Shown here: in pieces, positions 3,546-3,885 of the stretch
Position numbering within the stretch: position 1 is the first letter of the stretch
Layout of the letters: each line of letters opens with the position of its first letter
Source: Octopus sinensis
Lineage: Eukaryota
Assembly (NCBI RefSeq): GCF_006345805.1
Contig: NW_021828190.1
Span: forward strand, 1 to 9,029
Reading direction: 5' to 3'
DNA: 9,029 nucleotides
The notes under the pieces: generated by a model
What the model was told of the DNA's origin: nothing
Database searches by the model: none
What the model saw: the letters and a program-made list of their open reading frames with translations, nothing else
Translations under genes and position numbers: made by a program

Positions 3546-3885
3546 GTGCCAAGGACTCCAAATTTGCCATCAAGATGTAGGACAAGATACTGTGATAGCC
3601 TGGGCTTCAGAGGTCCACAGCTCTTCAATATCCTTCCGAAGGACCTGAGAGACCTGCATGGGGTGGATGCAGATGTCTTTAAAATAAAACTGGATCTCTT
3701 CCTGTCAGGTGTCCCAGATGAACCAACTTCACGGCTGGACGTGCAGATGAGGGCAGCTGCACCGAACTCTCTCATGCACCAAATGGCAATTGCTAAAAAA
3801 GCATTCGTGAAGTAAAATCATGTAGCAACACTGATTGGTGGTGCCCCAGCATGGCCACAGCTCGTGAGCTGAAACTAGATAAAAT
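3546..3885 (+). mobile_element. 5'-truncated LINE 3' end (CR1/L2-group-like ORF2 C-terminus, exact clade uncertain) with short 3' UTR
   Basis: SLGFRGPQLFNILPKDLRDL...FKIKLDLFLSGVPDEP...RAAAPNSL matches the post-RT thumb pattern (PxLxNxLP...FKxxLD) of APE-type LINEs. Stop at 3813-3815. The 3' UTR carries a stem-loop (3858-3871) followed by an A/T-rich tail. Confidence 0.8.

What the first reader, a model, noticed from the sequence alone, without database searches (positions are those of the whole stretch)
3837..3880. LINE 3' UTR and SINE 3' tail share a colinear end with a covarying stem-loop
Seen: 3837-3880 (LINE) and 8547-8590 (SINE) align without gaps. The first 24 nt are 22/24 identical (GGTGGTGCyCCAGCATGGCCrCAG), the next 10 match at only 2, and then GAAACwAG matches 7/8. 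The divergent part is a hairpin in both: CAGCT-CGTG-AGCTG (3858-3871) versus CAGTC-AAAT-GACTG (8568-8581), with two base pairs swapped compensatorily. Known: stringent LINEs recognise a 3' stem-loop that partner SINEs borrow. Inference: this identifies the mobilising LINE lineage and its RT recognition element. The different loop suggests the partner is a relative of this LINE, not this exact family.
Basis: partly seen in the sequence, partly recalled or inferred. Interest (0 to 1): 0.7.

Follow-up and report, generated by a model that had tools for sequence, protein, structure and literature searches.

The report
Shared LINE/SINE two-hairpin 3' tail
A truncated copy of a cephalopod "copy-and-paste" element (LINE) and a nearby short parasitic element (SINE) end in the same small RNA module of two hairpins; this is the ordinary, well-known way SINEs borrow a LINE's copying enzyme, seen here in a new pair.

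Summary
3837-3860 and 8547-8570 match 22/24, and the two tails stay colinear to 3880/8590. The interpretation also holds. 3546-3815 is the C-terminal end of a LINE ORF2 (endonuclease plus reverse transcriptase). A full-length relative (L125) matches the window copy at 92% straight through the ORF end, the UTR and the tail. The tail is therefore part of the LINE, not an inserted SINE scrap.

Seven LINE 3' ends, all found by protein similarity alone, carry the box directly after the stop codon. The box is 91% identical across them, while the adjacent coding DNA is only 60% identical.

The variable hairpin (SL2) comes next, followed by AAAC and A-rich short repeats. Both hairpins are supported by covariation: 94% of cells are paired, 11 of 13 pairs show changes on both sides, and 0 of 500 shuffles reach this. 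A LINE only 41% identical in protein keeps the same fold in the same register.

All four SINE copies have CAGTC/GACTG in SL2, and none of the eight LINE copies does. The partner is therefore probably a related lineage. RT recognition is inferred by analogy with UnaL2 and ZfL2 and was not tested. This is a new member of a known kind, of modest interest.

The parts
3546..3815 (+). 3' end of the LINE ORF2 (89 codons plus TAA stop at 3813-3815). The copy is 5'-truncated and begins directly after a (TG)n/(TA)n microsatellite.
   Evidence: ORF listed. HMMER hits to the C-termini of APE+RT proteins. 92% identical to the end of the full-length LINE L125.
3816..3835 (+). 3' UTR spacer between the stop codon and the tail module. 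It is specific to each lineage.
   Evidence: The spacer is 1-46 nt long and cannot be aligned between LINE lineages. It is conserved only with L125.
3836..3857 (+). LINE SL1: outer stem U-A, G-C, G-C, U.G; G/G 1x1 internal loop; inner stem G.U, U-A, G-C, C-G; tetraloop CCCA.
   Evidence: RNAfold, RNAalifold and pair counts.
3858..3871 (+). LINE SL2: CAGCU-CGUG-AGCUG. The basal CAG/CUG is conserved, the two apical pairs covary, and the loop is free.
3872..3905 (+). Conserved AAAC followed by an A/T-rich short-repeat terminus (TAGATAAAATATAAATA...). The exact 3' end of the element is uncertain.
   Evidence: AAAC follows SL2 in all seven intact LINE tails and in two of the four SINE tails, and is mutated in the three most decayed copies (AAAT, AAAT, AATC). 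The terminal repeats differ by lineage.
8189..8350 (+). SINE head, probably tRNA-derived. A-box-like TGGCTGTGTGG at 8199 and B-box-like GGTTCAGTCC at 8242.
   Evidence: Alignment with three O. vulgaris copies and the head-only copy at 5936-6100. Box motifs. No tRNA called by ARAGORN or Rfam.
8351..8546 (+). SINE internal (TA)n(TG)n microsatellite (about 8351-8400) and SINE body.
   Evidence: Colinear with the L001 copies. The microsatellite length varies between copies.
8547..8566 (+). SINE SL1 (GGU.GUGC-UCCA-GCAU.GCC). It has no -1/21 closing pair (A/G).
8568..8581 (+). SINE SL2: CAGUC-AAAU-GACUG. The family consensus is CAGUC-UAAU-GACUG.
8582..8625 (+). AAAC plus (GTAAAGA)n-like terminal repeats of the SINE.

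Best explanation
3836-3905 is the 3'-terminal module of a 'stringent-type' non-LTR retrotransposon: a single long ORF2 with apurinic-type endonuclease and reverse transcriptase, in a cephalopod, most likely an octopus. On the sense RNA the module has four parts:
- SL1, a 22-nt hairpin conserved in sequence, with an invariant G.U wobble, a G/G internal loop and an NCCA tetraloop (CACA in the distant relative L129).
- SL2, which abuts SL1. It is a 4-5 bp hairpin whose basal CAG/CUG is fixed, whose top two pairs covary, and whose 3-6 nt loop is free.
- AAAC.
- A-rich 5-8-mer tandem repeats.

The ~400-nt SINE at 8189-8625 has a probably tRNA-derived head and ends in the same module.

The inferred mechanism is as follows. 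The LINE's ORF2 protein binds this structured tail and nicks the target DNA. It then starts target-primed reverse transcription in the terminal repeats. SINE transcripts carrying a copied tail are mobilised in trans. The window's LINE copy keeps only the last ~360 nt. That is expected if reverse transcription starts at the tail and aborts early.

Shown here: the homology, that the tail belongs to the LINE, its selective conservation, and the covarying fold. Inferred: protein binding, the requirement for retrotransposition, and which LINE lineage drives this SINE. The partner is probably a relative with a CAGUC/GACUG SL2 and TAAAAGA-type repeats, not the window's own family.
For: Homology and significance.

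LINE identity of 3546-3815.

The tail belongs to the LINE. L125 is colinear at 92%. The box follows the stop codon in L002, L003, L004, L123, L124 and L125, and in decayed form in L001.

Selective constraint. The box is 91% identical on average, against 60% for the last 240 nt of ORF, and the spacer of 1-46 nt cannot be aligned.

Structure. The same two hairpins appear in the minimum-energy fold of the window LINE, the window SINE and five of the six fetched LINE tails; in L124 only SL1 is predicted. RNAalifold gives the same consensus. With 12 sequences, 94.2% of cells pair and 7 of 13 pairs change on both sides, reached by 0 of 500 shuffles; slid controls pair at 22-43%. Adding the LINE with 41% protein identity (L129), which aligns without gaps, gives 11 of 13 pairs changed on both sides. 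The G.U pairs are valid only on the sense strand.

Specificity. A covariance model finds only these 12 tails in 49 kb, at 50-70 bits; the next best hit scores 10.6 bits.

SINE family feature. Three O. vulgaris copies are colinear and carry CAGTC-TRAT-GACTG.

Mechanistic precedent. ZfL2 ORF2 binds its tail stem-loop through a region between the endonuclease and RT domains, with general recognition of the stem and specific recognition of the loop (PMC4176376). The UnaL2 tail stem needs its internal loop (PMC1636434).
Against: There is no functional data. The sample is small: 8 LINE tails, 4 SINE tails and 1 distant LINE. Several are decayed genomic copies rather than subfamily consensuses, so some 'compensatory' changes could be neutral post-insertion mutations. 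Relatedness also inflates the shuffle control. L123 and L124 have a C.C mismatch at the top of SL2, giving a 4-bp stem. One LINE lineage (L127/L128) has a completely different tail with a 12-bp hairpin. No target-site duplications could be identified around either window copy. No LINE carrying the SINE-type SL2 was found. The LINE clade (CR1 or L2) could not be assigned.
Confidence: 0.8

Rival explanations
1. The module is the same, but recognition rests on the conserved SL1, the base of SL2 and AAAC. The SL2 apex and loop would then be structural only. Any LINE lineage carrying the module, including the window's own family, could mobilise the SINE, and the loop difference would say nothing about the partner.
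For: The SL1 sequence is nearly invariant across lineages, whereas SL2 loops differ in both sequence and length (3-6 nt) among LINEs. The basal CAG/CUG and AAAC are conserved.
Against: In the best-studied stringent LINEs the loop is the specific determinant (PMC4176376). All 4 SINE copies keep one SL2 type that none of the 8 LINE copies shows. The SINE's terminal repeats and SL1 loop resemble other lineages more than the window's LINE.
Confidence: 0.3
2. The conserved tail serves another RNA-level role, not RT recognition. Candidates are transcript 3'-end formation, stability, export, or a small-RNA or host-factor binding site.
For: The conservation and covariation show that an RNA structure is under selection. 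They do not show what binds it.
Against: Its position at the extreme 3' end, next to terminal repeats, together with its capture by a non-coding SINE, is the signature of the TPRT initiation end. A 5'-truncated copy retains it.
Confidence: 0.08
3. 3837-3880 is a SINE tail fragment that landed next to a LINE ORF remnant, or the LINE captured its tail from the SINE.
For: None found.
Against: The full-length L125 is colinear through the tail. The box is present in LINE lineages whose ORF ends are only ~60% identical, and in a lineage with 41% protein identity it persists in isosteric form. The module is therefore old within the LINEs, whereas the SINE shares only these ~45 nt.
Confidence: 0.02
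4. Chance similarity between two GC-rich 24-mers.
For: The 20-nt core alone does occur by chance in high-GC bacterial coding DNA: 118 metagenome loci, none with SL2 or AAAC.
Against: 0 of 200 shuffles of the window give a match. The motif recurs at the same position in 12 independent LINE and SINE 3' ends.
Confidence: 0.01

Closest known systems
Eel UnaL2 / UnaSINE1 and zebrafish ZfL2-1 / ZfL2-2 (L2-clade stringent LINEs; PMC1636434, PMC4176376)
   Same: The LINE and SINE share a short 3' tail. The tail RNA forms a stem-loop with an internal loop or mismatch in the stem. Short tandem repeats lie at the very end instead of poly(A). The stem tolerates compensatory change while other parts are sequence-specific.
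   Different: Here there are two abutting hairpins, not one. The hairpin that is conserved in sequence (SL1) is the upstream one, and the downstream hairpin has a free loop. There is no experimental evidence. L2-clade membership was not established, and the conserved P-W...E..W tail-binding motif is not obvious in P0001 by eye.
CR1-clade LINEs and their SINEs, such as the tortoise Pol III/SINE-CR1 pair of Ohshima et al. 1996 (PMC231371, cited in PMC4824008; not read here). The avian CR1 3' hairpin plus octamer microsatellite is recalled from my own knowledge.
   Same: A hairpin followed by a short microsatellite at the 3' end. Copies are heavily 5'-truncated. The ORF2 C-terminal motif LFN.LP..LR...FK..LD.FL resembles CR1/L2-group elements; this resemblance is recalled from memory, not tested.
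   Different: The tail sequence and repeat units are unrelated. Clade assignment needs an RT phylogeny with Repbase references, which were not available.
Mollusc SINEs with LINE-derived tails (PMC4758252, PMC4824008) and the octopus SINEs OK, OR1 and OR2 (Ohshima & Okada 1994, cited in those papers)
   Same: tRNA-derived SINEs in molluscs whose tails match the 3' UTRs of CR1- or L2-type LINEs.
   Different: Those papers do not describe this tail.

Membership tests
Stringent-type LINE/SINE pair with a common 3' tail | The SINE 3' end is homologous and colinear with the LINE 3' end up to the terminus. | tested here: met
   22/24 plus a colinear SL2 and GAAAC. The 12-tail alignment is.
Stringent-type LINE/SINE pair with a common 3' tail | The tail is an integral, conserved part of the autonomous LINE, which encodes endonuclease and RT. 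| tested here: met
   Full-length ORF2 elements L123, L124 and L125 carry it. L125 is colinear with the window at 92%. The box is 91% identical against 60% for the ORF.
Stringent-type LINE/SINE pair with a common 3' tail | The tail RNA forms a conserved stem-loop supported by compensatory change. | tested here: met
   94% of cells paired, 11 of 13 pairs changed on both sides, 0 of 500 shuffles, slid controls 22-43%.
Stringent-type LINE/SINE pair with a common 3' tail | Short tandem repeats, not poly(A), at the extreme 3' end. | tested here: met
   (ATTAA)n in L123, (AATAAAAG)n in L002, (CATTAAAA)n in L004 and (GTAAAGA)n in the SINE, read. No tandem-repeat statistics were run.
Stringent-type LINE/SINE pair with a common 3' tail | ORF2 protein binds the tail, and the tail is required for retrotransposition in cis and in trans. 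| not testable with these tools
   Needs retrotransposition and binding assays.
tRNA-derived SINE | A 5' head with Pol III A and B boxes at tRNA-like spacing and recognisable tRNA similarity. | tested here: inconclusive
   A-box-like motif at 8199 and B-box-like motif at 8242. ARAGORN finds no tRNA and Rfam gives no tRNA hit at E<=1.
L2 clade of LINEs | RT phylogeny with reference L2 elements, and the conserved tail-binding region (cTBR) between endonuclease and RT (PMC4176376). | not testable with these tools
   No Repbase references were available. Inspecting P0001 by eye shows a basic stretch (KKIIPKDRKILMRRRTKILRR) but not the conserved Trp residues. No alignment was made.
CR1 clade of LINEs | RT phylogeny with reference CR1 elements. 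| not testable with these tools
   Only domain content (APE plus RVT_1, no RNase H) and a C-terminal motif recalled from memory.
Known octopus and cephalopod SINE families (OK, OR1, OR2, Ceph-SINEs) | Sequence identity to the published consensus. | not testable with these tools
   The consensus sequences are not in the held library.
Any curated Rfam RNA family | A covariance-model hit at the two sites. | tested here: not met
   No Rfam hit overlaps 3836-3875 or 8546-8585 even at E<=1.

The most novel reading that the evidence does not exclude
The two-hairpin module is an ancient, clade-wide RNA 'handle'. Its fixed features are an invariant G.U wobble, a G/G internal loop, a four-base loop ending in CA (NCCA, or CACA in the distant relative), and an abutting second hairpin. 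It would be conserved isosterically across LINE lineages down to about 40% protein identity, possibly across animal groups. Recognition would be bipartite. SL1 would be the general handle, and the SL2 apex and loop would be a lineage-specific key that decides which LINE drives which SINE. If so, tail typing could assign the drivers of the very large SINE expansions in octopus genomes.
Probability: 0.3. Interest if true: 0.5.

Novelty: new member of a known kind. Interest (0 to 1): 0.3.

Why it matters
SINEs are a very large part of octopus genomes, and octopus transcripts often embed them (PMC9115989). I found no description of which LINE drives which SINE in the papers I could search. This tail gives a concrete, searchable signature (SL1, SL2, AAAC, repeats) for pairing cephalopod SINE families with their autonomous LINE lineages. 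It also gives a compact RNA element with natural compensatory variants for testing how a stringent LINE's ORF2 protein recognises its template. In concept it is a textbook case of the 'common tail' model, not a new mechanism.

Tried and rejected
(1) The search for homologous proteins with the 89-aa peptide alone found nothing, because no 5-residue words were shared. The full HMMER search was needed.

(2) The look-up of encoding contigs found no record of two window ORFs.

(3) A viral-contig scan for the 20-mer gave 0 hits.

(4) The metagenome-contig scan with GGYGGTGCNCCAGCATGGCC was a poor choice. A pattern that included CTGAAAC would have been better.

(5) A genome-contig scan with the full-module pattern gave 0 hits.

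(6) The Rfam scan returned only low-complexity miRNA-like noise.

(7) A target-site duplication search gave nothing convincing: 7-mers for the SINE and only (TA)n for the LINE.

(8) Literature searches found no description of this octopus pair. 'sine' also matches 'sinensis', which made two octopus genome papers uninformative.

(9) The listing of cluster members gave no organism names for the LINE proteins, so the hosts of L002-L004, L123-L125 and L129 are unknown. Only L001 is named, as Octopus vulgaris.

(10) L126 (tail decayed and deleted) and L127/L128 (a different tail with a 12-bp hairpin) were left out of the covariation alignment.

Full report
**1. The observation**

The window is AT-rich and full of microsatellites. 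It is a mosaic of retroposon fragments.

3837-3860 and 8547-8570 match 22/24 (D17). MAFFT keeps them in one gap-free register through 3880/8590. The 24-mer with up to 3 mismatches occurs only at these two sites, and 0 of 200 dinucleotide shuffles give any match. The 10 nt that follow match at only 2 positions, yet they form CAGCT-CGTG-AGCTG in one sequence and CAGTC-AAAT-GACTG in the other. GAAAC follows in both. RNAfold returns these hairpins as the minimum-energy fold in both sequences.

The conserved 24 nt is itself a hairpin, GGU.GUGC-NCCA-GCAU.GCC. The two substitutions inside it lie at positions that RNAfold leaves unpaired in these two 44-nt stretches.

**2. What 3546-3880 is**

3546-3815 is an open frame ending in TAA, and it starts directly after a (TG)n/(TA)n run. 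Pfam finds nothing in the 89 residues, and the word-indexed protein search also finds nothing.

A full HMMER scan gives 569 hits. The best is a 984-aa protein, matched at its extreme C-terminus with 61% identity. That protein has Exo_endo_phos and RVT_1 domains. The window piece is therefore the C-terminal end of a LINE ORF2.

A profile of the C-termini (A2) retrieved 24 proteins. One is annotated in Octopus vulgaris.

I fetched the DNA of ten LINE 3' ends, chosen by protein similarity only:
- Seven carry the box within 1-46 nt after the stop codon: the window copy plus L002, L003, L004, L123, L124 and L125.
- The O. vulgaris copy (L001) has a decayed version.
- L126 has a deleted remnant.
- One lineage (L127/L128) has a different tail with a 12-bp hairpin.

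L125 is a contig with an intact 1033-aa ORF2. It aligns with window 3546-3900 at 92% identity, without a break, through ORF end, UTR, both hairpins and GAAACTAGATAAAAT.

The tail is part of the LINE family and not an inserted SINE scrap. The window copy is an ordinary, heavily 5'-truncated insertion.

**3. Selection on the tail**

I compared seven LINE copies:
- The last 240 nt of ORF are on average 60% identical.
- The spacer between stop codon and box is 1-46 nt long and cannot be aligned.
- The 24-nt box is on average 91% identical.

A non-coding element far better conserved than the neighbouring coding sequence is under its own constraint.

**4. The SINE**

8189-8625 aligns along its whole length with three copies in 20 kb of O. 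vulgaris chromosome. Its parts are:
- a head of about 160 nt, with an A-box-like motif at 8199 and a B-box-like motif at 8242;
- an internal (TA)n(TG)n run of variable length;
- a body of about 150 nt;
- the tail module;
- (GTAAAGA)n-like repeats.

ARAGORN and Rfam do not call a tRNA in the head, so tRNA origin is likely but unproven. 5936-6100 is a head-only copy.

Similarity between SINE and LINE begins exactly at the base of SL1.

All four SINE copies have the CAGTC/GACTG stem, with loops AAAT, TGAT, TAAT and TAAT. This stem is therefore a family feature and not a private mutation of the window copy.

**5. Structure and covariation**

I aligned 12 tails (8 LINE, 4 SINE; A4) and counted pairs on the two-hairpin structure:
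- 94.2% of cells form standard pairs.
- 7 of 13 pairs change on both sides.
- 0 of 500 shuffles reach this, and slid-partner controls pair at only 22-43%.

RNAalifold independently predicts the same helices.

In SL2 the basal CAG/CUG is fixed. The fourth pair is C-G or U-A. The fifth is C-G, U-A or, in L123 and L124, a C.C mismatch. Loops are 3-6 nt long with no conserved sequence.

In SL1:
- Pair 3/18 is U.G, C-G or U-A.
- The closing pair -1/21 is U-A, C-G or G.U in LINEs.
- One SINE copy has two flipped pairs.

The most telling case is L129, a LINE whose ORF2 is only 41% identical. Its 3' UTR aligns without gaps in the same register. It keeps 11 of 13 pairs, and 6 of those are changed on both sides. 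With L129 added, 11 of 13 pairs show a change on both sides.

Some features are invariant in all 13 sequences: the G.U wobble closing the inner stem of SL1, and the first G of the G/G internal loop (the second G is lost only in the decayed L001 LINE copy). The last base of the tetraloop (A) is also invariant. The base before it is C, except in two decayed copies, where it is T. G.U pairs are valid only on the sense strand, so the structure belongs to the transcript.

A covariance model built from A4 finds only the 12 known tails in 49 kb, at 50-70 bits. The next best hit scores 10.6 bits.

Caveats apply. The sample is small. Several sequences are decayed copies and not consensuses. Relatedness inflates the shuffle control.

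**6. Mechanism**

The anatomy has four parts: a structured tail at the extreme 3' end, short tandem repeats in place of poly(A), 5'-truncated copies, and a non-coding SINE that has copied just this module. This is the signature of a stringent-type LINE and its SINE.

The published precedents are direct:
- ZfL2 ORF2 binds its tail stem-loop through a region between the endonuclease and RT domains. The stem is recognised generally and the loop specifically (PMC4176376).
- The UnaL2 tail needs the internal loop in its stem (PMC1636434).

I therefore infer that the ORF2 protein binds SL1/SL2 and primes reverse transcription in the terminal repeats, and that the SINE is mobilised in trans. None of this is shown here.

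**7. Which LINE is the partner?**

No LINE copy sampled has the SINE-type SL2.

The SINE tail is 44/55-56 identical to the L002 and L003 LINE tails, against 38/55 for the window's LINE. It shares the UCCA loop of SL1 with them and TAAAAGA-type terminal repeats with L002 and the O. vulgaris LINE copy. Its SL2 differs from the CAGCC/GGCTG type by one compensated pair. It differs from the window's CAGCT/AGCTG type by two.

The alternative is that the SL2 apex is irrelevant and any lineage carrying SL1 can serve. That cannot be excluded.

**8. Comparison with what is known, and novelty**

The phenomenon is the classic 'common tail' of SINEs and LINEs. I could not assign the LINE to CR1 or L2, because no reference sequences were available. 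I also could not compare the SINE with the published octopus families OK, OR1 and OR2.

I found no description of this pair or of its two-hairpin tail in the searchable literature. Rfam has no matching family.

I rate it a new member of a known kind. It is useful for assigning SINE drivers in cephalopod genomes and as a natural mutant series for tail recognition. It would not surprise a specialist.

Noticed in passing
window 130-920 (+): A decayed C-terminal part of a different retroelement ORF. It has a zf-RVT-like hit just below Pfam's cut-off (24.1 bits against 27.5; E 5.8e-05) and is split over three frames or ORFs (167-385, 403-666, 678-920).
   Followed up: partly
window 4190-5640 (+): A fragment of a third LINE. 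It has an RVT_1 domain (4304-4849), then a broken frame, then a C-terminal region with C2H2 zinc fingers (4988-5635). The element has no tail like the one studied here.
   Followed up: partly
window 5936-6100 (+): A head-only copy of the same SINE family, 84% identical to 8199-8366. It stops at the position of the SINE's internal (TA)n microsatellite.
   Followed up: partly
window 7780-8030 (+) and 7380-7780: A second SINE-like element with a B-box-like GAGTTCGAATTCC. Its own 3' end is (ATT)n, and it sits immediately downstream of a 400-nt (ATT)n/(CTT)n array. This may be an insertion into a microsatellite that matches its tail repeats.
   Followed up: no
window 1745-2060 (-): A minus-strand tRNA-like SINE head (about 1965-2060) followed on that strand by a long (AAT)n array (1745-1965). 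This looks like a third SINE type, with a pure microsatellite tail.
   Followed up: no
L001 140-330: A tandem repeat with a 25-bp period (TAAGTGGCACCAGCATGGGCGCTTC) in O. vulgaris. Its core CCAGCATGG equals the centre of SL1. This could be chance or derived from a tail.
   Followed up: no
L127 880-915 and L128 (same positions): A related LINE lineage (C-terminus 48% identical) has replaced the tail with an unrelated 12-bp perfect hairpin (GGGGATTACAATG...CATTGTAATCTT). Tails therefore appear to be modular and exchangeable between lineages.
   Followed up: partly
L001 2955-3002 (-): One O. vulgaris SINE copy has two SL1 pairs changed on both sides (G-C to C-G and C-G to U-A). This suggests a SINE subfamily whose master carried a compensated SL1, not random decay.
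   Followed up: no
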